IMG/VR virus record: IMGVR_UViG_3300024503_000485 | Coordinates: 62,001 to 126,000 of that record | DNA: 64,000 nt | Reading direction: 5' to 3' (one strand) | Shown: positions 1,789 through 59,948 of the stretch, one piece after another | Layout of the letters: each line of letters starts with the position of its first letter | How positions within the stretch are numbered: position 1 is the first letter of the stretch | Translations under genes and position numbers: made by a program | The notes under the pieces: model-generated | Databases searched by the model: none | What the model was told of the DNA's origin: nothing | The model's input: the letters and a program-made list of their open reading frames with translations, nothing else

Positions 1789-3504
1789 TTATAGGCCTGC
1801 TAATTCTCTAACTCTTGCCAATTCTGCTAATTCAGGATTTTGTTCTGTTGATTGTTGTGGTGCCATTCTTTCTACAAATTTACGAGCAACTTGTTCTGCC
1901 TGCTCACCAAACTTCTTGCCTACCATTGTGCAAACACCCTCTGGGCCTTTAGGGAATGTATTAGATTCCTTATCATAGAAACTTGTGATAAACTCTGCAA
2001 GTTCTTGAACATTAATTGCTGTACGCTCTTTTCCTTGCTCATTGTCGTCACTGGCCATTTGAGGTTCGTCTTCGGGTGCTTCTTCGCCTCCTGCTTCGGG
2101 TTCTTCTTCTGAGTAGTCACCAAAATCTAATTGGCCGACTACATCTGGTGCGTTTTGTTCTAACCAATCTTTAACCAACCCTCTGCAACATGCCTCTGGA
2201 TCTTCTTTTGCCTTATCTTTAATGGCTTGGTCAAGTTTAGGATCTTCAATGATGCCTTTTAAACTTTCAATGGCATTGCTACCATCTACACCTGCTGGAA
2301 AATGTTGTCCAACTAATTCTTGTAATTCTTTAATCGCTGCGTCTTTTTGATCGGGATCTTGAATAGGGCTTGCTTCACCTAATTGATAAACCCAGTTTTC
2401 AAATTTTTCAAATGGATCATAATTTTCCATTTCAAATGTTTCTTCTTCGACAGCGGCATTGTTGGTCATTGCGACTATGTCGTCGTAGCCTATCGTGTTT
2501 CCTTCTTTCATTAGTCTATATAAGACCGGAAATACATTAGCAATGTCTTCTTTAAAATTTCTAACGGTAAATTTTTCTTTAAAATCTTCTACAACGTCTT
2601 GTGGTATTTCTTCACTATCGTATGCCTGGAAATTTTCTCTATATGCTTCGTAATGACTTTGTTTAGATAGTGCCTTAATTTGTTCACGTAGTCTATTTAG
2701 AGCCTCTCCGCTTCTTTCAACAATATTGTTTGTATCTGAATTCATTAAATCATTACGAACAACATAGTTGCTAAAACTTTTTAGTTGAGCAATTTCTTCG
2801 CTCATTTGTACAATTGATTTACCAATATCGTCGTATGGTACACCGCCATTAGCCACGTGACGTTGCATAGCACGAGCTCCTGCTAAATGAATGAAAGGAT
2901 ATTTAAATCTTTCACCGTCTTGGTTTTCAACAAATAATGCTGAAATATTACGTGTTCTAGCACCTGGTGCTTGATCGTCTGTTAATGCTTGACTATGTTT
3001 AATAATCAAACGTGTATCCATTAGTTTTTGATAGCTTACGGTCTTAGATCCGTACATTGTGCTTTCAGTAACATTCATTGTGCTTTCTCCGACTGGTGTT
3101 GGTTGTGTTGTAACCGCAGGTTCTGGTGAATTATGGCGGCTTAAAAATGCATAATCTCGTTTATCTAAATTGTCTTTAGTAATGTCACGAGTATCAAACG
3201 CCATTAACCTACGTTTAGCAAATAATCTTAATTCTCTTAAAAATCCAAACCAATTCTTCTTTTGAAGATCGTTCATTGATTCAGTAATTCCTGTACTGAA
3301 ATATACCTTCATAGAGTTTGGTTCAGCTAGGCTGATGCTAACATGGCCTACAGGTGTTTCACCTTCCATGTAATCAAAATCAAAAAATCTTGCTTCTTCT
3401 GGGTTTATTGTAATTTCGCTGGTTTCTGAACCTAGCTTTAACCCTTTAAAGCGGCTTCTAATTTTATAAAATAAATCTGTAGCAATATTGTTTGTAGCGT
3501 CCAT
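1789..3504 (-). CDS. Hypothetical protein, probable internal head/core protein (acidic C-terminal part)
   Basis: Long ORF; start reassigned to MDATNN (TAAATA 4 nt upstream); ends ELARVRELAGL like the scaffold C-terminus. Confidence 0.7.
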   Translation of the reverse strand: MDATNNIATDLFYKIRSRFKGLKLGSETSEITINPEEARFFDFDYMEGETPVGHVSISLAEPNSMKVYFSTGITESMNDLQKKNWFGFLRELRLFAKRRLMAFDTRDITKDNLDKRDYAFLSRHNSPEPAVTTQPTPVGESTMNVTESTMYGSKTVSYQKLMDTRLIIKHSQALTDDQAPGARTRNISALFVENQDGERFKYPFIHLAGARAMQRHVANGGVPYDDIGKSIVQMSEEIAQLKSFSNYVVRNDLMNSDTNNIVERSGEALNRLREQIKALSKQSHYEAYRENFQAYDSEEIPQDVVEDFKEKFTVRNFKEDIANVFPVLYRLMKEGNTIGYDDIVAMTNNAAVEEETFEMENYDPFEKFENWVYQLGEASPIQDPDQKDAAIKELQELVGQHFPAGVDGSNAIESLKGIIEDPKLDQAIKDKAKEDPEACCRGLVKDWLEQNAPDVVGQLDFGDYSEEEPEAGGEEAPEDEPQMASDDNEQGKERTAINVQELAEFITSFYDKESNTFPKGPEGVCTMVGKKFGEQAEQVARKFVERMAPQQSTEQNPELAELARVRELAGL

Positions 3505-3514
3505 TCTGTATTTA

Positions 3515-5101
3515 TCACATAAAGCCCGATACAAAGATCGGCATAGGCATTTGGTCTTCTGATAATTTATCAGTCATTTTTTCGTATACTTTAGGGTCCC
3601 AGTCCGCTAGTATGCTAGACATGCGAATTATTAACAATAATGCAGCCACTAAGTCGTCGTGTTCCCCAGATTTAGCTTTAAATCCAATTCCAGTAGCAAC
3701 GAATGTTTTTAACTCTGAAATTAAAGGTTTTGAACATAACTTCATTTTATGAGTTTCAATCATGTGTTTAAGTTGGCTACATGCAGAAATTTTTGTCTTA
3801 TGTGTAGTATTAAACCCTTTGCGGAATTTACGCACATGTCCTTTACGTATAGGCTCACTCAAGAATAATCCGGGGAAATTTTCCTCGCCAATATTTTGAA
3901 TACAAATTAAAGCAGCTTCACCTAAAGTGTTATTTTCAACACTATAATAAATTTGAGGATGACCGCCTTTTAATTCTCCCTGATCCTGGATATAAGAACA
4001 AATTTCTCTTAATATTTTTACTTGACTTTGTACTGGAGTTAAATTATGATACCATTCTGCTACTTGATCCATATGGGGCATTTCAAATACTTGAATAGCA
4101 CCATTGTCACCGCCTGTTCCTAAACTAGGATCTAATGCTACAAGATATGTTGCTTGCGGATTAATCTCTTTGTACCATCGTGTTTGTCCCATAGATAACA
4201 TAGGCTCAGTACCTTTTAATTCAGCAAGTTTAACTGAGTTAATTAACGTTTCGTCAAAGATCAAGAATTCACATTCAAATTCACGACGGAAACGTTCTTC
4301 TCCAATTTTTGCACGTTCTAATCTTGCCCATTCGTCATCTCGGTCTGGATGTTCGCTCCAGTGGGCAAAATAACTATGAAATCCGTTAACTCCTAATTTT
4401 TGTTCATTGCCAAATTCGTCAAATCTTTTGTTTGCTTCGGTCCAAATTAACGCAAACTGATCTTCGTCTGAGTTAGGTGTTGATGTAATGATACACTTAC
4501 CGCCTGTTGCTAGTGTAGGCGATAGGGCAGTCCAGAATTCTTTAGCTTTCTCGGGAGGTTGCACAAACGCAAACTCATCACAATAAATCAATGATAGAGA
4601 TTTACCACGACCAGTATTTTCTGTAGTTGTGGTTGCTTGTATACGAGCACCGTTATCGTATTCGATTGTATTTCTATTGTATGAATAAACACCTGCACGT
4701 ATAAAATCTGGAAGGTTTTCGTAACCATAACGGTAACGATCCATAATATCTTTTGCACCTTCGTATTTGTGTGCGGCAATAAGAACTTGACAATCAGGTA
4801 CAAACATTGTGTACCAGAGTAAGTAAGCAACGGCACATGTGGTCTTACCCATCTGACGAGGCAACATAGCAATACATTGTTTGTTGCCGTGATAGGCTTC
4901 AATTAACCGTTCTTGGTATTCGTACGGTTCAAAGGGAATACTACCTCGAACAGGATGTTGAATTTTAATAAAATTTTTAGCGAAATAAAGAGGACCTGTA
5001 ACAGGATCCATACACGCTTCGAGATGTTTAACTTCTTCAAGTGTGTATCGTTGCTGTTTATGCGCCTTCTTAATTAATACGCCATCTAATGATTTTGCCA
5101 T
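3515..5101 (-). CDS. gp17: Terminase large subunit (T4 gp17-like)
   Basis: YQ adenine-binding motif, Walker A PRQMGKT, Walker B LIYCDE, ITSTP motif III, nuclease ALD...HDDLV. Confidence 0.95.
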   Translation of the reverse strand: MAKSLDGVLIKKAHKQQRYTLEEVKHLEACMDPVTGPLYFAKNFIKIQHPVRGSIPFEPYEYQERLIEAYHGNKQCIAMLPRQMGKTTCAVAYLLWYTMFVPDCQVLIAAHKYEGAKDIMDRYRYGYENLPDFIRAGVYSYNRNTIEYDNGARIQATTTTENTGRGKSLSLIYCDEFAFVQPPEKAKEFWTALSPTLATGGKCIITSTPNSDEDQFALIWTEANKRFDEFGNEQKLGVNGFHSYFAHWSEHPDRDDEWARLERAKIGEERFRREFECEFLIFDETLINSVKLAELKGTEPMLSMGQTRWYKEINPQATYLVALDPSLGTGGDNGAIQVFEMPHMDQVAEWYHNLTPVQSQVKILREICSYIQDQGELKGGHPQIYYSVENNTLGEAALICIQNIGEENFPGLFLSEPIRKGHVRKFRKGFNTTHKTKISACSQLKHMIETHKMKLCSKPLISELKTFVATGIGFKAKSGEHDDLVAALLLIIRMSSILADWDPKVYEKMTDKLSEDQMPMPIFVSGFM

Positions 5102-5115
5102 ACTATTATTTACTG

Positions 5116-5143
5116 AAAAAAATAGGGCCTTGCGGCCCTATTT
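5116..5143 (-). terminator. Intrinsic terminator
   Basis: AAATAGGGCC-GCAA-GGCCCTATTT hairpin plus U tract on minus strand. Confidence 0.85.
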
Positions 5144-6258: not shown

Positions 6259-6843
6259 TTATCCTTTGACTGGGTTAGGGTTATCAACTTTACTCATAGG
6301 TGAGCTTGCACCCGCCTTGTCTTGTTTAAATTTAGGTAATTTGTATTCGACCTGTGTGCCGTTTTCTTTCTTTCTAGTCTTTGATGTTTTTTCTAGATCT
6401 TTTAAAAATCCTTTATTAAAATCATCACCGAAATAATCTTTAACCTTAATCTTGTCGTTTGACAATACTGGTTCTTCTAAAACAGCTTTACCACTTGGCT
6501 CAGAGTCAACAAATACTATGTCTGCTTCGTGAGAATCACCGCCGTTTCTAATACGGAAATGGCTCTCCGGTACAAAGTACTTGACATGTTCTGCAATTTC
6601 TGGTGCAGTAATAGGATATTCACAAACAACTTCAAATGTATGAACTTCCACATTACTTAATTCTGGAAAATCAATGGGTGATGCTTGTATAGGAGTTTTT
6701 GATTTTTCTACAATAGTAGGATTTGTTGCTCCCAAGCATTCTTTGAAATTTTTCTCAAAATTTTCAGGCAGTTCGCCAGCTACCCTTACTTTAAAAGGGT
6801 ACGATTTTTTGCTTTCAGCAAGGTATTCTCTAAAAGTCTTCAT
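6259..6843 (-). CDS. Hypothetical protein with capsid-targeting-like N-terminus
   Basis: N-terminus MKTFREYLAE resembles T4 internal protein CTS MKTYQEFIAE. Confidence 0.6.
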   Translation of the reverse strand: MKTFREYLAESKKSYPFKVRVAGELPENFEKNFKECLGATNPTIVEKSKTPIQASPIDFPELSNVEVHTFEVVCEYPITAPEIAEHVKYFVPESHFRIRNGGDSHEADIVFVDSEPSGKAVLEEPVLSNDKIKVKDYFGDDFNKGFLKDLEKTSKTRKKENGTQVEYKLPKFKQDKAGASSPMSKVDNPNPVKG

Positions 6844-6851
6844 AACTATAT

Positions 6852-7334
6852 TTATTCCTTTTGACCCAATTTCTTAAGAAGATCGTTGCGGTCTGTAATG
6901 ATGTAGCCCTGGCCTTGTAACACATCGTTTGGATCTTCGTTATTATCTTTATCAATCTTATACTTCTTAAGTTGAAGATCAATTGCTTTTAATTTTTTAT
7001 CAATTTTAGCAGTTTTAGCGTTAATAGCATTGCCCATCATGCTTGCTGCTACTTCAAAAATACGGCCGCTGTATCGTACTTCTACATTCATGCCCAAATC
7101 CATTAAATCGTCGTAGGCATCTTCTGCTTTCTTTGCTAGATTGTCAAGTTCTTTATCGTCTAATTCTTCTAACTCTTTGATAACAGGTAACCCTTTGGTT
7201 ATTTCTGCTACTGCTTTATAGCTATCTTCAAGAGAATTAACTTGTTCGTGCGAAACAACAGGAGCAGATTCTTCTGTTTTTTTCTCTGGTTCGGCAGAGT
7301 CTAAATTAAAAAGTTCTTCAAGTTTTTTGGTCAT
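6852..7334 (-). CDS. gp16: Terminase small subunit (T4 gp16-like)
   Basis: 160 aa helical protein with gp16-like RIFEVAASMM..AINAK segment and C-terminal RNDLLKKL; near TerL. Confidence 0.65.
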   Translation of the reverse strand: MTKKLEELFNLDSAEPEKKTEESAPVVSHEQVNSLEDSYKAVAEITKGLPVIKELEELDDKELDNLAKKAEDAYDDLMDLGMNVEVRYSGRIFEVAASMMGNAINAKTAKIDKKLKAIDLQLKKYKIDKDNNEDPNDVLQGQGYIITDRNDLLKKLGQKE

Positions 7335-7341
7335 ATATTAC

Positions 7342-7782
7342 TTATCTACGTTTTTTACCTTGATGAAAAATATCGCCTTCGTTTACAATACGAAATCTTA
7401 CACCTTGCTGTTTACACCACTTACTAGCAGCTTCCCATTTGGCCATATTTTTTACATATTGTTCCTGGTTATAAAGACTTTTTCCAACACTTTCTAATTT
7501 AGTTTGACTTTCCGGTTTTACTTCTACAACTTCTGCATGTTTATTTCCGTTCTTATCAACATAGACAATAAAAAAATCTGGGACATACACGGTATATTTT
7601 CCTGTTAAAGGATCTCGATAAGGTATTTGTATACTTTCGCTAGCCCAATTTTGAACGCCCTGATGTTCATCAAGCATTCTCATAAAAATAAATTCCCAGC
7701 TACTACGAGCTAACGGTGTTTTTTTCCCAACGTATTTGTCGGGATTTTTCATCTCAAACCTTCCTGATGCAAATTTAGGCAT
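7342..7782 (-). CDS. gp4: Head completion nuclease (T4 gp4-like, TnsA-type PD-(D/E)xK)
   Basis: KNPDKYVG, RSSWE, WASE, YVPDF, VEVKP, KWEAA motifs. Confidence 0.9.
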   Translation of the reverse strand: MPKFASGRFEMKNPDKYVGKKTPLARSSWEFIFMRMLDEHQGVQNWASESIQIPYRDPLTGKYTVYVPDFFIVYVDKNGNKHAEVVEVKPESQTKLESVGKSLYNQEQYVKNMAKWEAASKWCKQQGVRFRIVNEGDIFHQGKKRR

Positions 7783-8150: not shown

Positions 8151-9241
8151 TATACTATGTTATCCCCGCCGGCCATTATTTTAGGGCTTGCTATTGTGGT
8201 ATCTGTATTGTTTGAATTCTTTGGAAATGTTGCTCCAACAATACCGCCAACGGTATTGATTGCTCCACGAATTGTTGCAGGACTACTTAAAATATTAATT
8301 GCTTCTTGTTTAAGTCCGTCTTTACTTAAACCTTTGATATTTTTAACGGTATTTGCAGCAGCAATGGCAGTTCCTAAGAAGCCGCCGATACTACCAAATG
8401 CAGTACCATCACCTACAGCACCAAACACTGATTCAAGACCGTCTAGAACACCTCCAGGTCCTGTTAATGTTGCAACACCTCCACCGGCAACACTTAATGG
8501 ACTTGGTGTGGTATCGTAGTGTAATGTAGCGAATCCCTTAGGACTTCCAATGGCTACTTGTCCTGAACTATATCTAACAGATTCATATTGAAAACTCATT
8601 GTGTTTTCTAATGCCTCACTGCTTGCCGAGTAATCAACATTACCGTGACTCCAGGATGTTATTTTTGGATTAATATATGTGTATCCGTTAAATCTTCTAC
8701 GACTCATAGTATACACAGAAATACTTTTAATAAAATCTGGGCCTCTGTTATTGTCAAATCCGTATTGGAAGTTGTCTAATCCTGTCTCAGTCTGTCTATA
8801 GTTTGTTTTAGAAAATGCCTGATCAGGAAGATTTCGATCAGCAATATAATATCCCATATACAATGCCCATAGTGCATTGATAATTCCTGCGCTGTCATCG
8901 TAGAATGTTAGATTAACAGGATCGTAAGTATAGTTTTTGTAAATTATTTTTTTACGATTATATTGATTTTTAGTAACAGATTCGATTGTGTACTTAGGCA
9001 AGTCGGTAGATTTTACTAAGAATCCAATTTCGTCGGCATGTCTATTTGTAAATTGAGGTGCTTTAATTGCAGTCTTATCTAATTCAAATCGAACATAAAA
9101 TAAGAACTTGGTTCTCGGAGCCAACCTCATTGTATCGTCTATATACAGACGAGTTGCGTGTTGCCAATTCCCCCAAACACCTTTTGGATTTGTTAGACCT
9201 TGACCGACACCTGTAAGGAAACGAGTAAATTTATTTGCCAT
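8150..9241 (-). CDS. Tail tube initiator/tube-fold baseplate protein (gp54/gp48-like)
   Basis: Tube-fold motifs VKSTDLPKY..E...NQYNRK..Y..YDPVNLTFYDD and TMSFQYE; adjacent to tube gene. Confidence 0.65.
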   Translation of the reverse strand: MANKFTRFLTGVGQGLTNPKGVWGNWQHATRLYIDDTMRLAPRTKFLFYVRFELDKTAIKAPQFTNRHADEIGFLVKSTDLPKYTIESVTKNQYNRKKIIYKNYTYDPVNLTFYDDSAGIINALWALYMGYYIADRNLPDQAFSKTNYRQTETGLDNFQYGFDNNRGPDFIKSISVYTMSRRRFNGYTYINPKITSWSHGNVDYSASSEALENTMSFQYESVRYSSGQVAIGSPKGFATLHYDTTPSPLSVAGGGVATLTGPGGVLDGLESVFGAVGDGTAFGSIGGFLGTAIAAANTVKNIKGLSKDGLKQEAINILSSPATIRGAINTVGGIVGATFPKNSNNTDTTIASPKIMAGGDNIV

Positions 9242-9258
9242 ACAAATATTTATGCCAC

Positions 9259-9289
9259 AAAAAAACCCGGAATATTTCCGGGCTCTTTT
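9259..9289 (-). terminator. Intrinsic terminator after tail tube gene
   Basis: CCCGGAA-loop-TTCCGGG hairpin with U7 on minus strand. Confidence 0.8.
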
Positions 9290-9304
9290 GACTCAAATGA
9301 GTTA

Positions 9305-9946
9305 TTATTGTGCGCCTGAACGTCCAGTAACAGCTTCGCCAATTGTACGACCAACAACTGCGCCAATACCACGATCTGTTCCGGAGCCGTTTGCTCCTGC
9401 AAACTGAATTGCGTTATCGAAACGAATTGTTAATGCCACGGTAGCATGTTCGTTAGTACCGTAGGCTAACTCGCCGTAGTCTGCATTTTGAACAAAGCAA
9501 CCATACATTTCAAATTTTTCAAGAACGTTTGCTTCGCTAGCACCGTTACCGCCGTCAAGTACTTCAACGTTAGTTTGGAACTTGTAGTCGATACCAGAAC
9601 GTGCAGATGCCTGTTCCATAAAGTCAAATTGTTTCTGAATTTGTTGACCAACAAGTTTTTGTACAAAACCAGATGCATCATCACGTAGTGTTAATGTAAC
9701 GGTTTCGAATGAGTACTTACCTGCTAGGTATACTTTTGAGTTGTAAACATCTAGTGTCATTTCTTCAAAAGATACTTTAGGTCTTGTAACGTCTTGAACC
9801 TGCTTAGTTAATTCTACGCTAGATTCAACACCGAAACCAAGTAATGTTACTCTAAAGCGATACTTTAGTTTTGGCATTAGCAACGCTGTGTTGCTGTTTG
9901 CACCTGATGGTGGAATAGAAAATCTATTCAGTGATGATAGTGCCAT
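9305..9946 (-). CDS. gp19: Tail tube protein (gp19-like)
   Basis: PKLKYRFRV, VTRPKVSFE, YLAGKYSFETVTLTLRDD, YGCF...TIRFDNA; directly downstream of sheath. Confidence 0.9.
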   Translation of the reverse strand: MALSSLNRFSIPPSGANSNTALLMPKLKYRFRVTLLGFGVESSVELTKQVQDVTRPKVSFEEMTLDVYNSKVYLAGKYSFETVTLTLRDDASGFVQKLVGQQIQKQFDFMEQASARSGIDYKFQTNVEVLDGGNGASEANVLEKFEMYGCFVQNADYGELAYGTNEHATVALTIRFDNAIQFAGANGSGTDRGIGAVVGRTIGEAVTGRSGAQ

Positions 9947-13350: not shown

Positions 13351-13456
13351 TCCCTATTCTCCTGGTAATAGTTTTACTCAAAGTATTTAGCGGTAAAAGG
13401 TAAAAATACCTTCTTATAACATCAGAAAAAGGGGAAGAAAAGGTGTAAATATTTTT

Positions 13457-13795
13457 ATGAGACCACTTTGTAAGGCCTGTAATGAACGGCCTAGAGCATT
13501 AAATTATTATAAAGGTAAAAAACCTTATTATAGAACGCTCTGCGAAGCGTGTCTAGCTCACGGGTCTAAAGCACATATACCTCGTTGGAAACGTGCTGGA
13601 TACAAAATGAAATCGCAATGCGAAAAATGCGGATTTAAAAGTCCGCATTCTGAAGTATTTAGAGTATTTCACGTAGACGGCAATTTAGATAACTGCCGTC
13701 CTAGTAATCTAAAAACAATATGTTGTAATTGTTCTCAAGTTTTAAGCAAAGAGGGCATTACTTGGCGTCAAGGAGATTTGGTCTCTGACTACTAA
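13457..13795 (+). CDS. Zn-finger HNH-like protein (HNH motif degenerate)
   Basis: Four CxxC pairs; FHVDGNLDNCRPSNLKTICCNC; TAAATA 5 nt before ATG. Confidence 0.7.
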   Translation: MRPLCKACNERPRALNYYKGKKPYYRTLCEACLAHGSKAHIPRWKRAGYKMKSQCEKCGFKSPHSEVFRVFHVDGNLDNCRPSNLKTICCNCSQVLSKEGITWRQGDLVSDY

Positions 13796-14395
13796 TTCTG
13801 TCTGCTTAAATAGATCATCGATAGTTCCGTTATTATCTATAAAATGATCAAATTCTGTTCCTACCCATGCAGTTTCACTAGCATGAATTTTACGCATTTT
13901 TAATTCTTGGAACGCCCAGTTATGTCCTTGATTAGCGGCTAACGCTATATCATACCATTCGGGAAGTTCTCCTCTGCGTACCCATACAATTTTACCACCC
14001 GCATTTCTAATACTGCTAATTTCGTTGGGGAAACGACAATCTGAAATTACTACATTATCCTTAGAATTACGAAGTTTATTTTCTAATGATGCTATCCAAA
14101 TATCATCATGGAAGCCTTTGCGGCATACCTCTGTGCCCCAATATTGAAGTACCCACCTTGGAGTAAGTGTAGGCATTGCAAGTCTTTCTGCCCACCAAGG
14201 ATCAACTTGTTCGCGCCACTCTCTTGCTTCTTTGGTTCGACCTTCTAACATAGTTCGATCCCAACCAAACACAGAGCTTACTGCGTCTTTTAATGTATTA
14301 GCAAAAGACTCTCGTCTAAATTCGTGGAAATTAACTAGATAATCGGCAATAGTATCTTTGCCCGATCCAATAAACCCGCATACACCTATAATCAT
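13742..14395 (-). CDS. gp1: Deoxynucleoside monophosphate kinase (T4 gp1-like)
   Basis: GFIGSGKDT P-loop, SFANTLKD, TPRWVLQYWGTE, VVISDCRFPNE, HASE, NNGTIDDL. Confidence 0.92.
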   Translation of the reverse strand: MIIGVCGFIGSGKDTIADYLVNFHEFRRESFANTLKDAVSSVFGWDRTMLEGRTKEAREWREQVDPWWAERLAMPTLTPRWVLQYWGTEVCRKGFHDDIWIASLENKLRNSKDNVVISDCRFPNEISSIRNAGGKIVWVRRGELPEWYDIALAANQGHNWAFQELKMRKIHASETAWVGTEFDHFIDNNGTIDDLFKQTELVVRDQISLTPSNALFA

Positions 14396-14416
14396 AATAT
14401 CCTCCAGTTAAAGGAT

Positions 14417-14445: not shown

Positions 14446-15200
14446 CCAGTTATCCAGGTATAACCGGAGCCGCCTGGCACCAATTTCATTAGATCTTCAG
14501 TTAACTTATCAATTTCGGCTTGCCCTTCTGTTTTGAGTGCTGCTCCGTTTAATGAGCTTCCGCCGCCAGGACCGGCAATTTGAGCAAATTTTTCACGAGC
14601 TTGTCCTAGCATCATTTTGCAGTTAGCTAAAGCATAATCTTTAATCCATTGCCCAGAATAGGTATCGGTTATGATAGAGCTATCTGGTTTTGTGTTATAG
14701 ATTTGTAACATAACTGACTCATCAGTTCTTGGTCTTTGATGAATTATTAACTTTTTACTCTGCGGATGCCAAGTAAAATTAATAAATGCTCCAAACATTT
14801 TTCCTACAAGCTCTTGATATTGCGAAAAGAGTTCATAGGTTAACAAACCGCCCATATTTGTCGAGCTTAACAAATATGTATTAGTATAGGCTAAATTAAA
14901 AGGTTCAAATACCGTACCTCCGGTACCGCCTCCAGTTCTTGAACCAACGCTTCTTCTAAAAATTTGCCTAACCTGTTGTACTTCCTTAGGCAAAATATAT
15001 TCGTTAACATCGGTTTTTAGCACTAAAAAGGCATAGCTTTCTTCTACAGCATTATCTGAACGCTGACGGAAAACCGCTAGGGCACGATTAAGGGCTGTTT
15101 CGTAGTGGATTGGGTCTAACTCTACATCAACCATGCCGTCGCCTAGCATAGCTTTGCAGTAGTTATAAACCTCTTGTTTTACTTGATCAGTTGAGCTCAT
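14442..15200 (-). CDS. gp13: Neck/head-tail adaptor (T4 gp13-like)
   Basis: LGDGMVDVELD N-terminus; WIKDYALANCK.MLGQAREKF...GG.SLNG C-terminus. Confidence 0.88.
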   Translation of the reverse strand: MSSTDQVKQEVYNYCKAMLGDGMVDVELDPIHYETALNRALAVFRQRSDNAVEESYAFLVLKTDVNEYILPKEVQQVRQIFRRSVGSRTGGGTGGTVFEPFNLAYTNTYLLSSTNMGGLLTYELFSQYQELVGKMFGAFINFTWHPQSKKLIIHQRPRTDESVMLQIYNTKPDSSIITDTYSGQWIKDYALANCKMMLGQAREKFAQIAGPGGGSSLNGAALKTEGQAEIDKLTEDLMKLVPGGSGYTWITG

Positions 15201-15205
15201 GCTTG

Positions 15206-15226
15206 TATTTATCGTAGCGGTAAATA
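15206..15226. promoter_or_regulatory. Back-to-back late promoters (TAAATA on both strands) for divergent gp13 and gp14
   Basis: tattta 15206-15211 and taaata 15221-15226 in a 27-bp intergenic gap. Confidence 0.7.
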
Positions 15227-15227
15227 T

Positions 15228-16496
15228 ATGACTATGCCAAGACTTTCGCTATATCGTCCCGAAAAGGGCAACGACTACAAATTCATTGATAAAACCGTCT
15301 GGGAAATGTTCCAAGTTGGCGGTACAGATGTGCTTGTTCACAAGTATTTAGGGCCCGGTAGTTCTGTACAAGGAGATAATCCTAGTACTCCTACTTACGG
15401 AACCGATTCTGTGTCAAATATTCAAGATCTTTTATTTTTAGAAAATCGTGACCGAAAATATGATCCTGATGTTTATATTTTAAGAGGCGTATATAACCTG
15501 CAAGACATTGATTTTAATCTAAGTCAATTTGGTTTGTTCTTGCAAAATGATACAATTTTTATAACGTTTCATATTAATGATACCGTAGAAAAACTTGGTA
15601 GAAAAATTATATCAGGCGATGTGTTAGAATTGCCTCATTTAAAAGACGAATATGCACTTAACGATTTTAACTTTGCGTTAAAACGTTTTTATGTTATTGA
15701 AGAAGTTAGTCGTGCTGCGGAAGGTTTTTCAGTAACTTGGTATCCACATTTATATCGTGCTAAATGCAAACCTCTAGTAGATAGTCAAGAGTTTAAACAA
15801 ATTCTTGACGGCGTTGCAGGTGAAGGTACAAACCAAACATTACGCGACATTATGTCAACTTATGAAAAAGAAATGCAGATTACACAAGCAGTTCTTGACC
15901 AAGCTGAAGCAGATGCACCAAAGAGCGGATATGACACAAGCAAGTTTTATACTTTGCAGAAAAATTTAACTACAGGCGAAACTGAGCTAGTTACATCGGA
16001 TAACACACAATTAAATGTTTCTTTTGAAACTCAAGCCACTGATGAGACTGGAGATCCGTTGTTTGACGAGAACGGAGATCCAATTTATGTAGGTGCAACT
16101 GCTTCAACAATTTATAAGACTCCGGAATGGGAAGACTATGGCGGTTATATCACCGGTGACGGAATTCCTCCGAACGGAACACCGTTCTCAAGTGGTATTG
16201 CGTTTCCTTTAAATCCTGCAGAAGGACAATTTCATTTACGTACTGATTATTTTCCAAATAGATTGTTTAGATTTAACGGAGCACGATGGGTTAAATTTGA
16301 GGATAATATACGCATGACTATGAGCAATCTAGGTCCTTCCGATACAGAAATTGGCGCTACATTTGAAGGCAAGGATGATCGCAAGACGCAGAAGACTGGA
16401 TTTATTAATAATGAAACGGTTAATAAGATCAATAATAAAATGATCAAAGAAAGACAGAGTTTAAGTAAAGCTCTAAGACCAAAGGCGGATGAATAA
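15228..16496 (+). CDS. gp14: Neck/head closure protein (T4 gp14-like) with C-terminal extension
   Basis: DLLFLENRDRKY, LSQFGLFL.ND..FITFH, GDVLELPHL motifs; start may be ATG 15234. Confidence 0.75.
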   Translation: MTMPRLSLYRPEKGNDYKFIDKTVWEMFQVGGTDVLVHKYLGPGSSVQGDNPSTPTYGTDSVSNIQDLLFLENRDRKYDPDVYILRGVYNLQDIDFNLSQFGLFLQNDTIFITFHINDTVEKLGRKIISGDVLELPHLKDEYALNDFNFALKRFYVIEEVSRAAEGFSVTWYPHLYRAKCKPLVDSQEFKQILDGVAGEGTNQTLRDIMSTYEKEMQITQAVLDQAEADAPKSGYDTSKFYTLQKNLTTGETELVTSDNTQLNVSFETQATDETGDPLFDENGDPIYVGATASTIYKTPEWEDYGGYITGDGIPPNGTPFSSGIAFPLNPAEGQFHLRTDYFPNRLFRFNGARWVKFEDNIRMTMSNLGPSDTEIGATFEGKDDRKTQKTGFINNETVNKINNKMIKERQSLSKALRPKADE

Positions 16497-18004
16497 TGGA
16501 CTTCTTTTATGATGGGCAGATAAGACGCTATGTGACTCAGTTCATGCGCTTTTTTATTGGATTCAAGTATAAGGCCGGTGACGGCGAAGAACGCCATGTG
16601 CCAGTAATGTACGGTGATTTAACACGTCAAGTAGCTTCTATTATTAGAGATAACTCTGAAAATAAAATGCCTACCGTACCAAGAATTGCTTGTTATATTA
16701 CAGGTCTAGAGCTTGACATGACTAGACTAAGCGATGCTACCTTTGTAAGTAAAATCAATATTAGAGAAAGAAAATATTCAGACTTTGATGAAGCAGGTGA
16801 TCCTATATATGAAAGTACTCAAGGTGGTCATTATACTATAGAACGTTTAATGCCAACTCCGTATAAGTTAAGCATGAAAGCAGATATATGGACTTCAAAC
16901 ACTGATCAAAAATTGCAATTGTTAGAACAAATTCTTGTTTTCTTTAATCCAAGTTTCGAAATTCAAACCACTGATAACTTTGTTGATTGGACTAGTCTTA
17001 GTGTTGTAAATTTAAAAAATTTAACGTTTAGTTCTAGAACAATTCCGCAAGCAGCAGAAAGCGATATTGATATTTGTAGTATAGAATTTGATATGCCTAT
17101 CTTTATTACAGCTCCTGCTAAAGTTAAAAAACTTGGAGTTGTTAAAAACATTGTTACTAATATCTTTACTGAAGACGGTGATGTGCTAGGACTTGAAGAC
17201 TTAACAATGGACCTTGGAAAAGCCGGTACTCAGTTATTTAGAACCTATGATCAATACGGTGTCTTGTTATTAAAAAGTAATAACGGTCAATCCAATGACT
17301 ACGATTTATCTATTTTAGACGTTTATGAAGCCGTTCAGGCTGCAGGCCTTGATGTTCCAGTAAAATATGGAGATAGATTAGATTGGAATCTTGTGTTAGA
17401 ACATCACGGTGGTTATACTCCGGGATTAAGTATGGTCTACTTCTTACAGCCTAACGGTAATGAAATTCGAGGAACATTTACAATTAATCAGATAGATCCA
17501 ACATATCTTGTTGTAACAATTGAAGATAAACCTTCAAATACATCGATTCCCGGACCAGCAAGATCAAATAATAGTTGGACAACAATAGATGCAATTATCG
17601 ATCCTTATAAATTTAATCCAATCGAAGTGTTTGGTTCTGCATCGTTAATAACTCCTGGTATTAGATATTTGATGCTAGAAGATGTAAACCCTAGTGAAAA
17701 TAGAGGCGGAGTAATGCAATATGGCCAAAGTCCTGCAGACGGAAGCAGCGGAGATCCTTACGACGGTCCAGATGGATGGAAAGATGTAAACGGATATGAC
17801 CTATATCTTAAAGCAAATTCTATTATTGAATGGGATGGTACTACATGGGTAACCGTTTTTGATCCAGCTGCGGCTACTGAACTAACATATGTTACCAATT
17901 TAAAAACAGGTATTCAATATAAATGGGATTTAGAGCAGTGGCTCAAATCATTCGAAGGCGAATATGCTGCCGGAACGTGGAGATTTAACCTCGACGGAGA
18001 ATAA
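16496..18004 (+). CDS. gp15: Tail sheath stabiliser/terminator (T4 gp15-like) with C-terminal extension
   Basis: FFYDGQIRRY, VPVMYG, PTPYKL, QLLEQILVFFNPS motifs. Confidence 0.85.
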   Translation: MDFFYDGQIRRYVTQFMRFFIGFKYKAGDGEERHVPVMYGDLTRQVASIIRDNSENKMPTVPRIACYITGLELDMTRLSDATFVSKINIRERKYSDFDEAGDPIYESTQGGHYTIERLMPTPYKLSMKADIWTSNTDQKLQLLEQILVFFNPSFEIQTTDNFVDWTSLSVVNLKNLTFSSRTIPQAAESDIDICSIEFDMPIFITAPAKVKKLGVVKNIVTNIFTEDGDVLGLEDLTMDLGKAGTQLFRTYDQYGVLLLKSNNGQSNDYDLSILDVYEAVQAAGLDVPVKYGDRLDWNLVLEHHGGYTPGLSMVYFLQPNGNEIRGTFTINQIDPTYLVVTIEDKPSNTSIPGPARSNNSWTTIDAIIDPYKFNPIEVFGSASLITPGIRYLMLEDVNPSENRGGVMQYGQSPADGSSGDPYDGPDGWKDVNGYDLYLKANSIIEWDGTTWVTVFDPAAATELTYVTNLKTGIQYKWDLEQWLKSFEGEYAAGTWRFNLDGE

Positions 18005-18012
18005 GTAAAGGT

Positions 18013-18402
18013 ATGCAACAGCGTGCCGGACTACTATTTCTTGCCAAAAAAACAGAACGGATTTTGTTAATCTTAGAAGATTACAAATGGACCGTTCCTA
18101 CTTTTCCAAGACAAAATACTTTATTAGAAGATGCCCAGGGTCTTTTAAGAGATTATTCTCAGGGTAGAATATTACCTATTGAATTATATCTTAGCGAAGA
18201 TAAGGGGTTTGAATACGGCACTTATGTTTGTTTAGTTGAAGAAGAATTTTTAACAAGGGCTAGCCCAACAATATGTTGGAGCAGCATCGAATACTTGCCT
18301 AAAAATCTTCATAATGGTTTAAAAACCACACTAAATAATCAGCTTATTAAAACAAAAATTGAAACTATATTGGTCTTAGAAAATGATGAAAATACAAAAT
18401 AG
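18013..18402 (+). CDS. Nudix-fold-like protein lacking a canonical Nudix box
   Basis: AGLLFLA..RILLI..WTVP N-terminus and W...LP.NLH.GL C-terminus; no GX5EX7REUXEE. Confidence 0.45.
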   Translation: MQQRAGLLFLAKKTERILLILEDYKWTVPTFPRQNTLLEDAQGLLRDYSQGRILPIELYLSEDKGFEYGTYVCLVEEEFLTRASPTICWSSIEYLPKNLHNGLKTTLNNQLIKTKIETILVLENDENTK

Positions 18403-18679
18403 CGAACGCTTCAAACAGGAATATCAAAAATTTCAAGAAAGAATTTCTTTGGTAACTGATTCTGATCTACAGAAAAAAATGATCGACATGCTATTGACGA
18501 TCAAATCTAGAGTTCAAGCACTTGATCAACAGCATGATCATGTCTTTTTAACAGGCAAGGTTCCTAATGACATTACTGAAACTAGAAACGATCTAACCCA
18601 AGTAAGACGTGAGTTAGATCGTATGTTGACTAGTTGGGAATCTTCGATTAAGCCTGTGCCTCACCCCAACGAAGAATAA
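18383..18679 (+). CDS. Hypothetical helical protein
   Basis: 98 aa ORF converging on and overlapping the end of the 2153-aa gene. Confidence 0.55.
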   Translation: MMKIQNSERFKQEYQKFQERISLVTDSDLQKKMIDMLLTIKSRVQALDQQHDHVFLTGKVPNDITETRNDLTQVRRELDRMLTSWESSIKPVPHPNEE

Positions 18680-25778: not shown

Positions 25779-26216
25779 TTAAACTCTTGTAAGGTCGTTT
25801 AGGCTGTAAAAATAAGTGGCACTAAAAATCAACTTACCGCCTAATAAAAGGCTGGAATTGTCGTAAGTAGAACCGTCTGGACTAGACGCTGGCTGCGCCT
25901 TTAACTGAAGTTTTGACTCTGAAATTGTAGCTGTAATTTCCACTAAATTTTCGTTGATATTAGTTCTGCCGTAGATTGTAATATCTGCTTTACCCGATCC
26001 TGCAACCACCAAACATTTAATCATTTCTTTTCTAATATTGCTAACATCAACAACAATAGTGTACTCTGCCGCGGCAAAATCCCCAACATACCATTCGTCA
26101 ATTAGGGTATCTGACGTAACTGGTATCCAAGGTCCTTTGTAGGAGAAATTAACTCCGTTTTGTAATCTTAGAGTATTTTTTAAACCACGTAGAAAGTATT
26201 TTGCAAAATTTAGCAT
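25779..26216 (-). CDS. Hypothetical virion protein
   Basis: 145 aa beta-rich; resembles the C-terminal domain of 51537-52424 (ITIYG vs VTAYG). Confidence 0.55.
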   Translation of the reverse strand: MLNFAKYFLRGLKNTLRLQNGVNFSYKGPWIPVTSDTLIDEWYVGDFAAAEYTIVVDVSNIRKEMIKCLVVAGSGKADITIYGRTNINENLVEITATISESKLQLKAQPASSPDGSTYDNSSLLLGGKLIFSATYFYSLNDLTRV

Positions 26217-26238
26217 AGTAGTGTATTTATCAGATAGT

Positions 26239-26261
26239 AAAAAAGCCCCTTTCGGGGCTTT
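26239..26261 (-). terminator. Intrinsic terminator after carbamoyltransferase
   Basis: AAAGCCCC-GAAA-GGGGCTTT plus U tract. Confidence 0.85.
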
Positions 26262-33346: not shown

Positions 33347-33366
33347 TTTATGTTATCTCCTAATAA

Positions 33367-42917: not shown

Positions 42918-42972
42918 TTATAGCTCCGTTATGCAAGTATTAATATTTATTCAATCCGTAAATGCTAGGTTT

Positions 42973-50370: not shown

Positions 50371-50394
50371 GTAGTATTTAGTCGTATAGGAAAA

Positions 50395-52424: not shown

Positions 52425-52470
52425 TTACGTATCTCCGCTCCATTGATACGTATATTTAACCGTTTTAATA

Positions 52471-54833: not shown

Positions 54834-54839
54834 TATTTA

Positions 54840-55106
54840 TCAGCGACCAAGTAATGCCATTAGCTCTAATTTTTCTACTAATTCGATTACTCTGTTAATT
54901 TCGTCTATTTCTGCTTGCGCTCTTTCTAAATATTGTCTTTGATGCGTTTGTCTATAGTGTACTCCAGCAATTGCAAAATTTTGTATGTGATTTTCTATAA
55001 TTTGTTCGATTCGATTAACATCATGAGTAAACATAGGAAAACGACTACGCCATGCTTGAATATGCTTGCGTAGTAAAGAAAAATCTTTTTCTCCTTCAAT
55101 TCGCAT
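54840..55106 (-). CDS. Hypothetical helical protein
   Basis: Start reassigned to MRIEGE (ATG 55106; TAAATA 5 nt upstream; the track start lies in the terminator). Confidence 0.6.
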   Translation of the reverse strand: MRIEGEKDFSLLRKHIQAWRSRFPMFTHDVNRIEQIIENHIQNFAIAGVHYRQTHQRQYLERAQAEIDEINRVIELVEKLELMALLGR

Positions 55107-55124
55107 ACCAATATTTAAGTCAAA

Positions 55125-55150
55125 CAAAAAGCCCCTTGCGGGGCTTTTTG
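55125..55150 (-). terminator. Intrinsic terminator after major capsid gene
   Basis: CAAAAAGCCCC-GCAA-GGGGCTTTTTG. Confidence 0.9.
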
Positions 55151-58095: not shown

Positions 58096-58109
58096 CTATT
58101 TGTCCTCAA

Positions 58110-59000: not shown

Positions 59001-59066
59001 GTTAAATTCTCCTTCAAGGTATGGTTAGGCTGTGTTTTTATTTACTGCGTAGATTAAAAAAAGGGG

Positions 59067-59765
59067 TTAAATGACGTTTTTTTGATTCGTTTGGTCAGAA
59101 TATATAGTTCCGGGGAACTTTTTTTCAAATTCTTCAAAACTTATATGTTTTAAATTTGGTAATGTAGGGCCAAGTTTTTCTGGAATAAATGATCCCGATT
59201 CTACTACTCTGTAAAACTGATTACCTCTCCAATCTCTAATCGTTTTTTCTGTTTGACTTAGCCAATTACCGTGGTAAGTGGGCGGTTCAAAACTCTTTTT
59301 ATAGTTATATGTATCGGCATAAACATTGTTAAATTTACCTTCTATGCCTTCATAATCAAATCCAAAAATATATATGTCTTTGTGGCCGCAATCGCAAGCA
59401 AAATAAAGAGCTGTTGGACCGCTACTCCATCCCCTATGCGGATGGAAAAAGTTAACTCCGGACTTAGTATTAACTCCTTTGTTTGGATTTGTCCATACAG
59501 AATGTGTTCTGTGATACCCGCTGGCTATAATTTCGTTGACCATTTTTACGTCAACTGCAATTAAAAAATCGGGTTCAAATTCTCTGTAAAGTGCGTTACA
59601 ACCAAATGTAGTGCCGTATTCTGGCAGGGCAGCATGATTTAATCTTAGTCTGCTACGCCCATTACCAAGTACGAAAGCTGGTTCATTCCGCGGGTTGCTG
59701 TGCTTCAACTGGAGTACCGTACATCTGTTGTATAAACGAACGCTCTGATTGTTCTTCCATTTCAT
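59067..59765 (-). CDS. Maf/DUF115-like (sialyltransferase-fold) putative glycosyltransferase
   Basis: AFVLGNGRSR, TFGCNALYR..PDFLIAVD, SSGPTAL..A...G.KDIYIFGFD; true start uncertain (possibly TTG 59708). Confidence 0.6.
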   Translation of the reverse strand: MKWKNNQSVRLYNRCTVLQLKHSNPRNEPAFVLGNGRSRLRLNHAALPEYGTTFGCNALYREFEPDFLIAVDVKMVNEIIASGYHRTHSVWTNPNKGVNTKSGVNFFHPHRGWSSGPTALYFACDCGHKDIYIFGFDYEGIEGKFNNVYADTYNYKKSFEPPTYHGNWLSQTEKTIRDWRGNQFYRVVESGSFIPEKLGPTLPNLKHISFEEFEKKFPGTIYSDQTNQKNVI

Positions 59766-59931
59766 GAGCTTCGCTTTGTTGGCGCAGTTGGTTGATTTGT
59801 CGTAAAGTTAATCGAATTTTACGAGTATCTGATTTTTTTAAGACAGAACTATCTCTGGAAGCGTCATATCTTTGATCGTTTCCAAAGTCGTTTGTATTGT
59901 CGTTAAAATAGAAAAATTCACGTAGAAGCAT
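59683..59931 (-). CDS. Small hypothetical head-module protein
   Basis: MLLREF start; DTRK.RLTLRQINQLR; TAAATA 5 nt before ATG. Confidence 0.7.
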   Translation of the reverse strand: MLLREFFYFNDNTNDFGNDQRYDASRDSSVLKKSDTRKIRLTLRQINQLRQQSEAHEMEEQSERSFIQQMYGTPVEAQQPAE

Positions 59932-59948
59932 AATAATATTTACCTAAG

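What the first reader, a model, noticed from the sequence alone, without database searches (positions are those of the whole stretch)
3502..59942. Systematic leaderless late mRNAs: TAA(A/G)TA sits 5 nt before ATG with no Shine-Dalgarno
Seen: motif-to-ATG spacers are 5 nt at ATG 5101, 6843, 9241, 13457, 15200, 18013 (TAAGTA), 55106 and 59931; 4 nt at 3504 and 7334 (TAAGTA); 7 nt at 26216 and 15234. None has room for an SD. Sheath (motif at 13384), the 3071-aa fibre (42944), prohead core (59039) and the genes at 50258, 52424 and 54766 have the same motif followed by a leader with an SD. Established: the T4 gp55 late promoter TATAAATA spans about -13 to -6, so a 5-nt spacer puts +1 on the A of ATG. 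Inference: there is a two-tier late programme in which low-copy proteins (TerL, TerS, gp13, tube initiator) are leaderless and high-copy ones are SD-led. This could set stoichiometry or bypass host translation defences.
Basis: partly seen in the sequence, partly recalled or inferred. Interest (0 to 1): 0.75.

Follow-up and report, generated by a model that had tools for sequence, protein, structure and literature searches.

The report
Late promoters abutting start codons
In this uncultured freshwater giant phage and its relatives, a T4-like late promoter box (TAAATA) sits exactly 4-7, mostly 5, bases before the ATG of a fixed subset of late genes, so those messages probably start at the start codon and are translated without a ribosome-binding site; the start sites themselves are not yet mapped.

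Summary
In the 219-kb contig, 22 of 144 TAAATA copies lie 4-7 nt before the first ATG of a long ORF. Other A4T2 hexamers do so in 0.5% of copies (p=2e-22).

The spacing is bimodal: 4-7 nt without a Shine-Dalgarno (SD) sequence, or at least 14 nt, mostly with one. Nothing lies at 8-13 nt. T4 has no case at 4-7 nt.

The arrangement is conserved gene by gene in many IMG/VR relatives, down to 40% protein identity. The terminator stems and the spacer letters vary; the box and the spacing do not.

TAAATA behaves as a gp55-type late promoter core:
- A gp55-like sigma gene is present.
- The box is depleted elsewhere in the genome.
- Sheath RNA contigs end just downstream of the box.

The base before the ATG is a pyrimidine in 47 of 54 such genes, a start-site signature.

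So leaderless late mRNAs are the best reading, at about 0.7. No transcription start is mapped, and one metatranscriptome has contigs that overrun two predicted starts. The "low-copy versus high-copy" idea is only loosely supported. I rate this a new variant of known kinds: T4 late promoters, and leaderless late genes of Thermus phages.

The parts
3502..3514 (-). TAAATA (3509-3514) + 4 nt + ATG (3502-3504) of a 571-aa virion structural protein; the box starts right after the TerL stop codon
   Evidence: 33 of 38 distinct orthologous upstream regions have a 5-nt spacer and 4 have 4 nt.
5099..5112 (-). TAAATA + 5 nt + ATG of the large terminase
   Evidence: About 40 of 44 distinct orthologous upstream regions are terminator + TAAATA + 4-6 nt (mostly 5) + ATG.
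5116..5143 (-). Hairpin + U-run terminator ending 3 nt before the TerL TAAATA box
   Evidence: -16.4 kcal/mol, z = -5.35. The stems co-vary in relatives.
6841..6854 (-). TAAATA + 5 nt + ATG of a 194-aa protein of unknown function; the TAA is also the stop codon of the upstream gene
   Evidence: 44 of 69 orthologues keep 5 nt; about 19 have the box 16-23 nt upstream instead.
7332..7344 (-). TAAGTA variant + 4 nt + ATG of the TerS-like protein; the TAA is the stop codon of the upstream gene
   Evidence: TAAGTA and the 4-5 nt spacing are conserved in most relatives of 71-96% identity.
9239..9252 (-). TAAATA + 5 nt + ATG of a 363-aa tube-like paralogue (not the main tube)
   Evidence: 34 of 37 distinct orthologous upstream regions, down to 40% aa identity, have exactly 5 nt. 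The main tube is 9305-9946.
9258..9290 (-). Terminator hairpin + U-run, 5 nt upstream of the TAAATA box
   Evidence: -20.1 kcal/mol, z = -5.41. Conserved by compensatory changes in relatives.
13384..13389 (-). TAAATA late promoter of the sheath gene, with a 33-nt leader carrying AGGAG
   Evidence: RNA contigs of 4 runs end at 13371, 13354, 13349 and 13348, and none crosses the box. The spacing is 30-35 nt (58-59 in three) in all but one of 31 relatives, with a conserved SD.
13446..13459 (+). TAAATA + 5 nt + ATG of an HNH endonuclease-like gene
   Evidence: Orthologues: 30 at 5 nt, 14 at 4 nt.
15198..15211 (-). TAAATA + 5 nt + ATG of the head-tail adaptor (gp13-like)
   Evidence: 38 of 39 distinct orthologous upstream regions have exactly 5 nt.
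15221..15236 (+). Divergent TAAATA + 7 nt + ATG (15234) of a 420-aa virion protein; the ATG at 15228 is not conserved
   Evidence: spacer 7 nt in 36 of 45 (counting the 19 with the extra ATG), 8 nt in 5, 5 nt in 3.
18002..18015 (+). TAAGTA + 5 nt + ATG of a 129-aa protein; the TAA is the stop codon of the upstream gene
   Evidence: TAAGTA + 4-5 nt is conserved in most of the relatives shown. An RNA contig (17341-18029) spans the junction.
26214..26229 (-). TAAATA + 7 nt + ATG of a 145-aa protein of unknown function
   Evidence: Same 7-nt spacer in G001.
26239..26261 (-). Terminator hairpin + U-run, 9 nt upstream of the box
   Evidence: -14.2 kcal/mol, z = -3.6.
55104..55117 (-). TAAATA + 5 nt + ATG of an 88-aa protein downstream of the major capsid gene
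   Evidence: In relatives, terminator + TAAATA + 5 nt in 8 of 15 and 7-8 nt in 3.
55125..55150 (-). Terminator hairpin + U-run after the major capsid gene, 7 nt before the box
   Evidence: -18.5 kcal/mol, z = -4.44.
59929..59942 (-). TAAATA + 5 nt + ATG of an 82-aa protein just after the portal gene
   Evidence: 52 of 54 orthologous upstream regions have 4-6 nt (30 at 5, 20 at 4).
59039..59044 (-). TAAATA promoter with a 38-nt SD-bearing leader (prohead core/scaffold operon leading to the protease and major capsid genes)
   Evidence: The spacing varies from 24 to 52 nt in relatives, with a conserved AGGAG.
42944..42949 (-). TAAATA promoter with a 26-nt leader (GGAG) before the 3071-aa fibre gene
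52453..52458 (-). TAAATA promoter with a 28-nt leader (GGAG) before the 295-aa gene
54834..54839 (-). TAAATA 67 nt before ATG 54766, leader with AAGGAG
50375..50380 (-). TAAATA about 116 nt before ATG 50258, leader with a GGAG-type SD

Best explanation
TAAATA is the core of a gp55-type late promoter, equivalent to positions -11 to -6 of T4's TATAAATA. The phage's own late sigma, bound to host RNA polymerase, would read it.

In a fixed subset of genes the box sits 5 nt (range 4-7) before the ATG. This subset is about 22 sites in the 219-kb contig and 34 in a near-complete 353-kb relative. With that spacing, transcription should begin on or within 1-2 nt of the A of AUG. The mRNA would then have no leader and no Shine-Dalgarno. 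It would be translated by the leaderless route: a ribosome with initiator tRNA binds the 5'-terminal AUG.

The other TAAATA-driven genes keep leaders of at least 14 nt, mostly with AGGAG.

Inferred consequences:
- A leaderless gene is translated only from transcripts started at its own late promoter. Read-through RNA carries an internal AUG without an SD.
- Expression of these genes is therefore locked to late time and is probably modest.

Shown: the motif, the spacing, its conservation and the sigma gene. Inferred: the exact start site and the mode of translation.
For: 1. **Spacing peak.** 22 of 144 TAAATA copies lie at 4-7 nt, against 0.5% for control hexamers (p=2e-22). TAAATA is the top hexamer at that position.
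2. **Bimodal spacing.**

| Genome | 4-7 nt | 8-13 nt | 14-45 nt |
|---|---|---|---|
| G000 | 22 | 0 | 30 |
| G001 | 34 | 4 | 53 |
| T4 (TAAATA) | 0 | 5 | 34 |
| T4 (TATAAATA) | 0 | 1 | 20 |

. This fits "either no leader, or a leader long enough for an SD".
3. **T4 numbering.** The review of T4 late transcription numbers the first base of the 8-bp late box as -13, so the box spans -13 to -6 (PMC2988020). A 5-nt spacer therefore puts +1 on the A.
4. **Late sigma.** A gp55-like gene lies at G000 135206-136054 (phrog_12791 E=1.8e-82, phrog_234 E=6.5e-23; T4 gp55 E=1.2e-5).
5. **RNA boundary.** Sheath RNA contigs in four metatranscriptomes end 13-36 nt downstream of the box and never cross it.
6. 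**Terminators.** Strong hairpin + U-run terminators end 3-9 nt before the box at four genes. That leaves no room for another promoter downstream of the terminator.
7. **Conservation of the spacing.**
   - TerL: about 40 of 44.
   - Tube paralogue: 34 of 37, down to 40% identity.
   - Adaptor: 38 of 39.
   - g3504: 37 of 38.
   - g59931: 52 of 54.
   - In the same loci the leadered promoters drift: sheath 30-35 nt, prohead core 24-52 nt.
8. **Stable classes.** Between two genomes at a median 67% aa identity, the pairs are 13 leaderless-leaderless, 19 leadered-leadered, 95 none-none and 8 switches.
9. **No SD.** An SD-like 4-mer is present in 5 of 54 leaderless-type genes and 54 of 86 leadered genes.
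10. **Start-site signature.** The base before the ATG is a pyrimidine in 47 of 54 (23 of 23 with a 5-nt spacer) against 46% elsewhere (p=1.3e-9). This Y(-1)R(+1) preference belongs to transcription initiation, not to ribosome binding.
11. **N-termini.** tblastn alignments of orthologues begin at residue 1, so the first ATG is the real start.
Against: - No 5' end was mapped at any leaderless candidate.
- In the deepest RNA run (X15), contigs cover 14855-15235 and 15219-15604. They overrun the predicted starts at 15200 and 15231-15234 by 35 and about 12-15 nt. The other three runs stop 18-63 nt inside the genes. The cause may be DNA carry-over, antisense RNA or extra upstream starts; I could not tell which.
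- An RNA contig spans the 18004/18013 junction.
- At 6843, 7334 and 18013 the TAA of the motif is the upstream stop codon, so termination-reinitiation could contribute there.
- With 4-nt spacers the base before the ATG is not pyrimidine-biased.
- With 7-8 nt spacers a 1-3 nt leader would remain.
- No gp33 or gp45 homologue was found, so the T4 start-site geometry is borrowed, not shown.
- The host is unknown, so its ability to translate leaderless mRNA is unknown.
Confidence: 0.7

Rival explanations
1. TAAATA is a late promoter, but the abutting genes are mostly translated from longer polycistronic or read-through RNAs. Translation would then use SD-independent internal initiation or termination-reinitiation. 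The tight spacing would only reflect genome compaction, or promoters that serve genes further downstream.
For: - X15 contigs run across the predicted starts at 15200 and 15234, and a contig bridges 18004/18013.
- The TAA of the motif is the upstream stop codon at 6843, 7334 and 18013.
- About 45% of all called genes have no SD-like 4-mer either.
Against: - Compaction does not predict a sharp mode at 5 nt with an empty 8-13 nt zone.
- It does not predict a pyrimidine before the ATG in 23 of 23 genes with a 5-nt spacer.
- It does not predict conservation of the exact spacing down to 40% identity while leadered promoters drift by tens of nt.
- Four sites follow strong terminators.
Confidence: 0.15
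2. At the abutting sites UAAAUA acts in the RNA as a non-SD ribosome recruitment element. It occupies the place of an SD and might be read by ribosomes modified by the phage.
For: - The hexamer occupies -11 to -6, the SD position.
- A 98%-complete relative encodes ribosomal protein bS21 and IF1 homologues.
Against: - The same hexamer stands 14-116 nt upstream of SD-led late genes.
- It matches the T4 late box, and a gp55-like sigma is present.
- Sheath RNA does not include it.
- Terminators 3-9 nt upstream leave no promoter that could put it into RNA.
- The Y(-1)R(+1) bias is a transcription signature.
- No 16S or S1 logic for this exact hexamer is known (my own knowledge).
Confidence: 0.08
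3. The pattern is a chance product of AT-rich intergenic DNA and TAA stop codons.
For: - The genome is 38% G+C.
- Three sites reuse the TAA as a stop codon.
Against: - Enrichment is 30-fold or more over same-composition hexamers (p=2e-22).
- TAAATA is depleted overall.
- T4, with a similar G+C content, has no such case.
- The arrangement is conserved per gene.
Confidence: 0.01

Closest known systems
Bacteriophage T4 late promoters (gp55-RNA polymerase, TATAAATA at -13 to -6)
   Same: - Same TAAATA core, no -35 element, location upstream of structural genes.
- A phage gp55-like sigma is encoded.
- The box is found on either strand.
   Different: - Positions -13 and -12 are not conserved here: only 5 of 144 copies are TATAAATA.
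- No gp33 or gp45 homologue was found.
- In T4 none of 225 TAAATA or 32 TATAAATA copies sits 4-7 nt before a gene start. T4 late genes have leaders.
Late-gene motif ATAAATA of the cultured jumbo relatives CBB and GAP32 (Rak2-like group) and PA5oct
   Same: - Related capsid and terminase proteins (44-72% aa).
- An ATAAATA motif before structural genes, a gp55-like sigma, and no gp33/gp45 (PMC5259590).
   Different: - The TerL genes of PA5oct, Phosso and GAP32 lack TAAATA-N5-ATG.
- TAAATA-N5-ATG is not enriched over a reversed-pattern control in those genomes: 15 vs 12, 3 vs 2 and 5 vs 8. In relative G001 it is 20 vs 5.
Thermus phage phiYS40 (and P23-45): leaderless middle/late transcripts
   Same: A lytic phage whose later genes are expressed from promoters that give leaderless mRNAs (PMC3594737).
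   Different: - There, most middle and late transcripts are leaderless, in a host phylum where leaderless genes are common, and the promoters are host-sigma type.
- Here only a conserved minority is leaderless, beside SD-led late genes. The promoter is gp55-type and the host is unknown.
-10 region adjacent to ORFs in Deinococcus-Thermus (TANNNT motif), and leaderless genes of actinobacteria
   Same: A -10 element at a fixed short distance from the start codon, beside a second class of genes with GGAG-type ribosome-binding sites. A spacing requirement was shown by experiment (PMC12340547).
   Different: That is a cellular, sigma-70-type system. Here it is a viral late regulon with its own sigma.
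Lambda cI mRNA from the PRM promoter
   Same: The classic phage leaderless mRNA, starting at the A of AUG (my own knowledge; cited within PMC12340547).
   Different: That is a single regulatory gene, not a conserved set of 20-35 genes.

Membership tests
T4-type (gp55-dependent) late promoter | AT-rich -10 box with a TAAATA core and no conserved -35, upstream of late/structural genes | tested here: met
   The TAAATA core is invariant and the 12 nt upstream show no conservation. The box lies before the sheath, fibre, prohead core, TerL and adaptor genes. It is depleted elsewhere and 36% of copies are intergenic.
T4-type (gp55-dependent) late promoter | Full 8-bp consensus TATAAATA | tested here: not met
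   Only 5 of 144 TAAATA copies are TATAAATA, and positions -13 and -12 are variable. Variation at these two positions is known in Aeromonas phage Aeh1 (PMC2988020).
T4-type (gp55-dependent) late promoter | Phage-encoded gp55 late sigma | tested here: met
   A 282-aa ORF at G000 135206-136054 matches phrog_12791 (E=1.8e-82), phrog_234 (E=6.5e-23) and T4 gp55 (E=1.2e-5). It lies outside the window.
T4-type (gp55-dependent) late promoter | gp33 co-activator and gp45 sliding-clamp activator | tested here: not met
   T4 gp33, T4 gp45 and Pfam PF02916 gave no match above the family cut-off in G000 or in the 98%-complete G001. The same is reported for CBB. Distant analogues cannot be excluded.
T4-type (gp55-dependent) late promoter | Transcription starts about 6 nt after the last A of the box | tested here: inconclusive
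   The sheath RNA contigs end at 13371 at most, that is within 13 nt downstream of the box, and none crosses it. Contigs cannot give the exact base.
Leaderless mRNA | Primary 5' end at the A of AUG, or a leader of at most a few nt | tested here: inconclusive
   three runs stop inside the genes. One run has contigs that overrun the predicted starts at 15200 and 15234. There is no strand or 5'-end information.
Leaderless mRNA | AUG start codon, no Shine-Dalgarno, and a -10 element at a fixed short distance | tested here: met
   All sites have ATG. SD-like 4-mers occur in 5 of 54. The spacing mode is 5 nt with an empty 8-13 nt zone. A pyrimidine precedes the ATG in 47 of 54.
Leaderless mRNA | Translation from a 5'-terminal AUG (70S/IF2 route, kasugamycin-tolerant) | not testable with these tools
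   This needs toeprinting, reporters or ribosome profiling.
phiYS40-type leaderless late programme | Most middle and late transcripts are leaderless | tested here: not met
   Only 22 of about 52 gene-proximal TAAATA sites are of the abutting type, about 8% of genes. The major structural genes are SD-led.
phiYS40-type leaderless late programme | Shift of host initiation factors (IF2 up, IF3 down) | not testable with these tools
   One related fact only: relative G001 encodes IF1 and bS21 homologues and no IF3_C domain.

The most novel reading that the evidence does not exclude
This clade of freshwater jumbo phages runs its late regulon in two translation modes chosen by promoter placement.
- One mode is SD-led, for bulk virion proteins.
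- The other is "promoter-locked" and leaderless, for about 20-35 conserved genes. These would be translatable only from transcripts started at their own gp55-type promoter.
- The phage's own translation genes (IF1 and bS21 in the complete relative) would tune host ribosomes so that both modes work late in infection.
Probability: 0.2. Interest if true: 0.85.

Novelty: new variant of a known kind. Interest (0 to 1): 0.62.

Why it matters
If the starts are confirmed, this would be the first T4-superfamily lineage in which the gp55-type late promoter is systematically fused to start codons. I found no report of this in the paper library.

- **Expression logic.** It would show that a phage can sort late genes into SD-dependent and leaderless translation simply by where it places a 6-bp box, and keep that sorting gene by gene over deep divergence.
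- **Clean test case.** It allows direct questions about what leaderless initiation is for: dose control, insulation from read-through, or independence from the anti-SD.
- **Annotation.** Start codons in this large environmental clade can be fixed by the box. One example is 15234 rather than 15228. Gene finders that expect an SD will mis-call these starts.

Tried and rejected
- **Near-identical DNA in cultured phages:** none found.
- **PA5oct omics paper:** it reports only sigma-70-like motifs and has nothing on late starts.
- **Cultured relatives PA5oct, Phosso and GAP32:** the TerL upstream regions lack the arrangement, so none is an experimental stand-in.
- **Host inference from the relative's IF1:** the best hits are 51-61% identical and spread over many phyla, so it is uninformative. 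The host remains unknown.
- **tRNAs in the window:** none.
- **5' structure of the coding starts:** only weakly lower in the leaderless class (-1.70 against -2.68 kcal/mol, p=0.004 against unclassified genes; not significant against leadered genes). I treat this as minor.
- **A second motif (TAYGCA before TAAATA):** seen in distant relatives but has only one clear copy in this contig. Not pursued.
- **RNA evidence:** The terminator-preceded sites at 5101 and 9241 could therefore not be examined in RNA.
- **Pfam:** no hits for the gp55-like, tube, adaptor or TerS-like proteins. PHROGs did give hits.

Full report
**What the window is.** The window is bases 62001-126000 of a 219,444-bp IMG/VR viral contig. 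The contig comes from riverine metagenomes, has 37.8% G+C and is rated 62% complete.
- It carries a T4-like structural module:
  - large terminase, sheath, tube-like paralogue and adaptor;
  - portal and major capsid protein;
  - main tube;
  - prohead protease and giant fibre proteins.
- Its capsid and terminase proteins are closest (44-72% aa) to the Rak2/GAP32/CBB/PA5oct/Phosso group of jumbo myoviruses. No cultured phage matches at the DNA level.
- A 353-kb relative, G001, is 98% complete with a median protein identity of 67%. I used it as a replicate.

**Observation.** All 12 motif-ATG pairs are at the stated coordinates with the stated spacers. The leadered examples also exist.
- Genome-wide, 144 TAAATA copies give 6, 11, 3 and 2 cases at spacers 4, 5, 6 and 7 before the first ATG of an ORF of at least 50 aa. 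There are none at 8-13 nt and 30 at 14-45 nt. G001 gives 11, 14, 6 and 3, then 4, then 53.
- Same-composition hexamers give 28 of 5258 against 22 of 144 (p=2e-22). Among all 4096 hexamers, TAAATA ranks first at that position, ahead of AAGGAG and AGGAGA.
- TAAATA is the rarest A4T2 permutation. It is half as common as its Markov expectation, and 36% of copies lie in the 4.3% of the DNA that is intergenic. In the window, TAARTA is found 80 times against 146±12 expected. This is the footprint of a signal that is avoided where it is not wanted.

**What TAAATA is.** It is most likely a gp55-type late promoter core.
- The review of T4 late transcription numbers the first base of the 8-bp late box (TATAAATA, as quoted) as -13, so the box spans -13 to -6. 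It notes relatives whose first two positions differ (PMC2988020).
- CBB and GAP32, relatives of this phage, have ATAAATA before structural genes, a gp55-like sigma, and no gp33 or gp45 (PMC5259590).
- This contig encodes a 282-aa gp55-like protein (phrog_12791 E=1.8e-82; T4 gp55 E=1.2e-5). I found no gp33 or gp45.
- In four metatranscriptomes the abundant sheath RNA contigs end at 13371, 13354, 13349 and 13348. That is just downstream of the box at 13384-13389, and none crosses it.

**Why leaderless is the best reading.**
- With the T4 numbering, a 5-nt spacer puts +1 on the A of ATG, and 5 nt is the mode.
- The spacing is bimodal with an empty zone at 8-13 nt. That zone would give leaders too short for an SD yet not leaderless.
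- SD-like 4-mers occur in 5 of 54 abutting genes against 54 of 86 leadered ones.
- Strong hairpin + U-run terminators end 3-9 nt before the box at 5101, 9241, 26216 and 55106. The only promoter that can serve these genes is the box itself.
- The base before the ATG is a pyrimidine in 47 of 54 abutting genes, and in 23 of 23 with a 5-nt spacer. Elsewhere it is 46% (p=1.3e-9). This is the pyrimidine(-1)/purine(+1) preference of RNA polymerase start sites, and ribosome binding gives no reason for it.

**Conservation of the arrangement.** The abutting sites keep their spacing while the surrounding letters change:

| Gene | Distinct upstream regions that keep the spacing |
|---|---|
| TerL | about 40 of 44 (terminator + box + 4-6 nt, mostly 5) |
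| Tube paralogue | 34 of 37 at exactly 5 nt, down to 40% identity |
| g3504 | 37 of 38 |
| Adaptor | 38 of 39 at exactly 5 nt |
| HNH | 44 of 50 |
| g59931 | 52 of 54 |

- Terminator stems and spacer letters change freely in these loci.
- In the same loci the leadered promoters drift. The sheath box lies 30-35 nt (58-59 in three) and the prohead-core box 24-52 nt from the ATG, each keeping AGGAG.
- Gene classes are stable between G000 and G001, with 8 switches in 135 pairs.
- T4 has no abutting case. PA5oct, Phosso and GAP32 show no enrichment, and their TerL genes lack the arrangement.

**What speaks against it, or is open.**
- No start site is mapped.
- In the deepest RNA run the contigs 14855-15235 and 15219-15604 overrun the predicted divergent starts. 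They overlap each other by 17 nt and are not joined. The other three runs stop 18-63 nt inside the genes. Contigs carry no strand, depth there is only about 6, and DNA carry-over is possible. I leave this unexplained.
- A contig bridges 18004/18013.
- At 6843, 7334 and 18013 the TAA is the upstream stop codon, so reinitiation may add to expression. Even so, TAAGTA as a whole is conserved at 7334 and 18013, which suggests a weaker box variant.
- Spacers of 7-8 nt (15234, 26216) would leave 1-3 nt of leader.

**The two-tier idea.**
- SD-led genes include the sheath with the main tube behind it, the prohead core-protease-capsid operon, and the fibres.
- Abutting genes include TerL, the TerS-like protein, the adaptor and a tube paralogue. 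They also include a 571-aa and a 420-aa virion protein, an HNH nuclease, a 2OG-oxygenase-like protein and many small unknowns.
- RNA depth is 11-23 for the sheath against about 2-6 for the neighbouring abutting genes. The difference is therefore at least partly transcriptional.
- The trend fits "bulk proteins are SD-led" but it is not a clean copy-number rule.
- My added inference is that a leaderless gene is silent on read-through RNA, so its expression is locked to its own late promoter.

**Comparison and novelty.**
- Leaderless late genes are known in Thermus phage phiYS40 (PMC3594737).
- A -10 box adjacent to ORFs is now documented, with spacing experiments, in Deinococcus-Thermus (PMC12340547).
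- Lambda cI is the classic single case.
- I found no report of this for gp55-type promoters or T4-like phages, and T4 itself lacks it.
- I therefore rate it a new variant of known kinds. It is well supported by sequence statistics and comparative evidence and awaits 5'-end mapping.

Noticed in passing
L193:1471-1707 and L194:1483-1701 (G001 33352-33510 and 66617-66811): The 98%-complete relative G001 encodes a ribosomal protein bS21 homologue (PF01165, 68.5 bits) and an IF1 homologue (PF01176, 68 bits). It has no IF3_C domain. Neither gene is in the 62%-complete contig that holds the window. They may bear on how the phage handles translation initiation.
   Followed up: partly
L108-L160 (distant tube-paralogue loci); window 59045-59054: In relatives at 40-47% identity, a second conserved word (about TATACGCAC, TATCTACGT or ATCTGCGTA) lies 15-25 nt upstream of the TAAATA box, between the terminator and the box. 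In the window a similar ATCTACGCAG directly precedes the box at 59039-59044. It could be a second promoter or a regulator site.
   Followed up: partly
window about 11059 (inside the sheath gene 9949-13350): The sheath RNA contigs of all four runs have lengths that place their far end at the same base, about 11059. This suggests a strain-variable or repeated stretch that breaks the assembly there.
   Followed up: no
window 15790-15952 and 14337-14396: RNA contigs of runs X17, X18 and X20 carry clustered substitutions, a 70-nt skip (15790 to 15861) and loose ends. Related strains of the phage co-occur in the river samples.
   Followed up: no
window 13457-13795 (+) and 13742-14395 (-): An HNH endonuclease-like gene and a deoxynucleoside monophosphate kinase gene (phrog_139, E=1.7e-50) sit between the sheath and adaptor genes, inside the structural module. 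The HNH gene has almost no RNA coverage in three of the four runs.
   Followed up: no
window 26264-28090 (-): A Nol-like carbamoyltransferase (phrog_1601, E=1.8e-170) lies among virion genes. It may modify a glycan or the virion.
   Followed up: no
window 18648-25109, 33702-42917, 42973-48471 (-): Three giant ORFs of 2153, 3071 and 1832 aa. The first matches virion structural protein families and the third tail-fibre families; the second was not scanned.
   Followed up: partly
window 15228 against 15234 (+): The longest-ORF start at 15228 is not conserved: relatives read ACT where this phage has ATG. The conserved start is ATGCCA at 15234. Automatic annotation would probably pick the wrong start.
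   Followed up: yes
L-series loci of g6843: About 19 of 69 orthologues of the 194-aa gene carry the TAAATA box 16-23 nt upstream instead of 5 nt. These are natural switches between the leaderless and leadered forms of one gene, and would make a useful comparative set.
   Followed up: no
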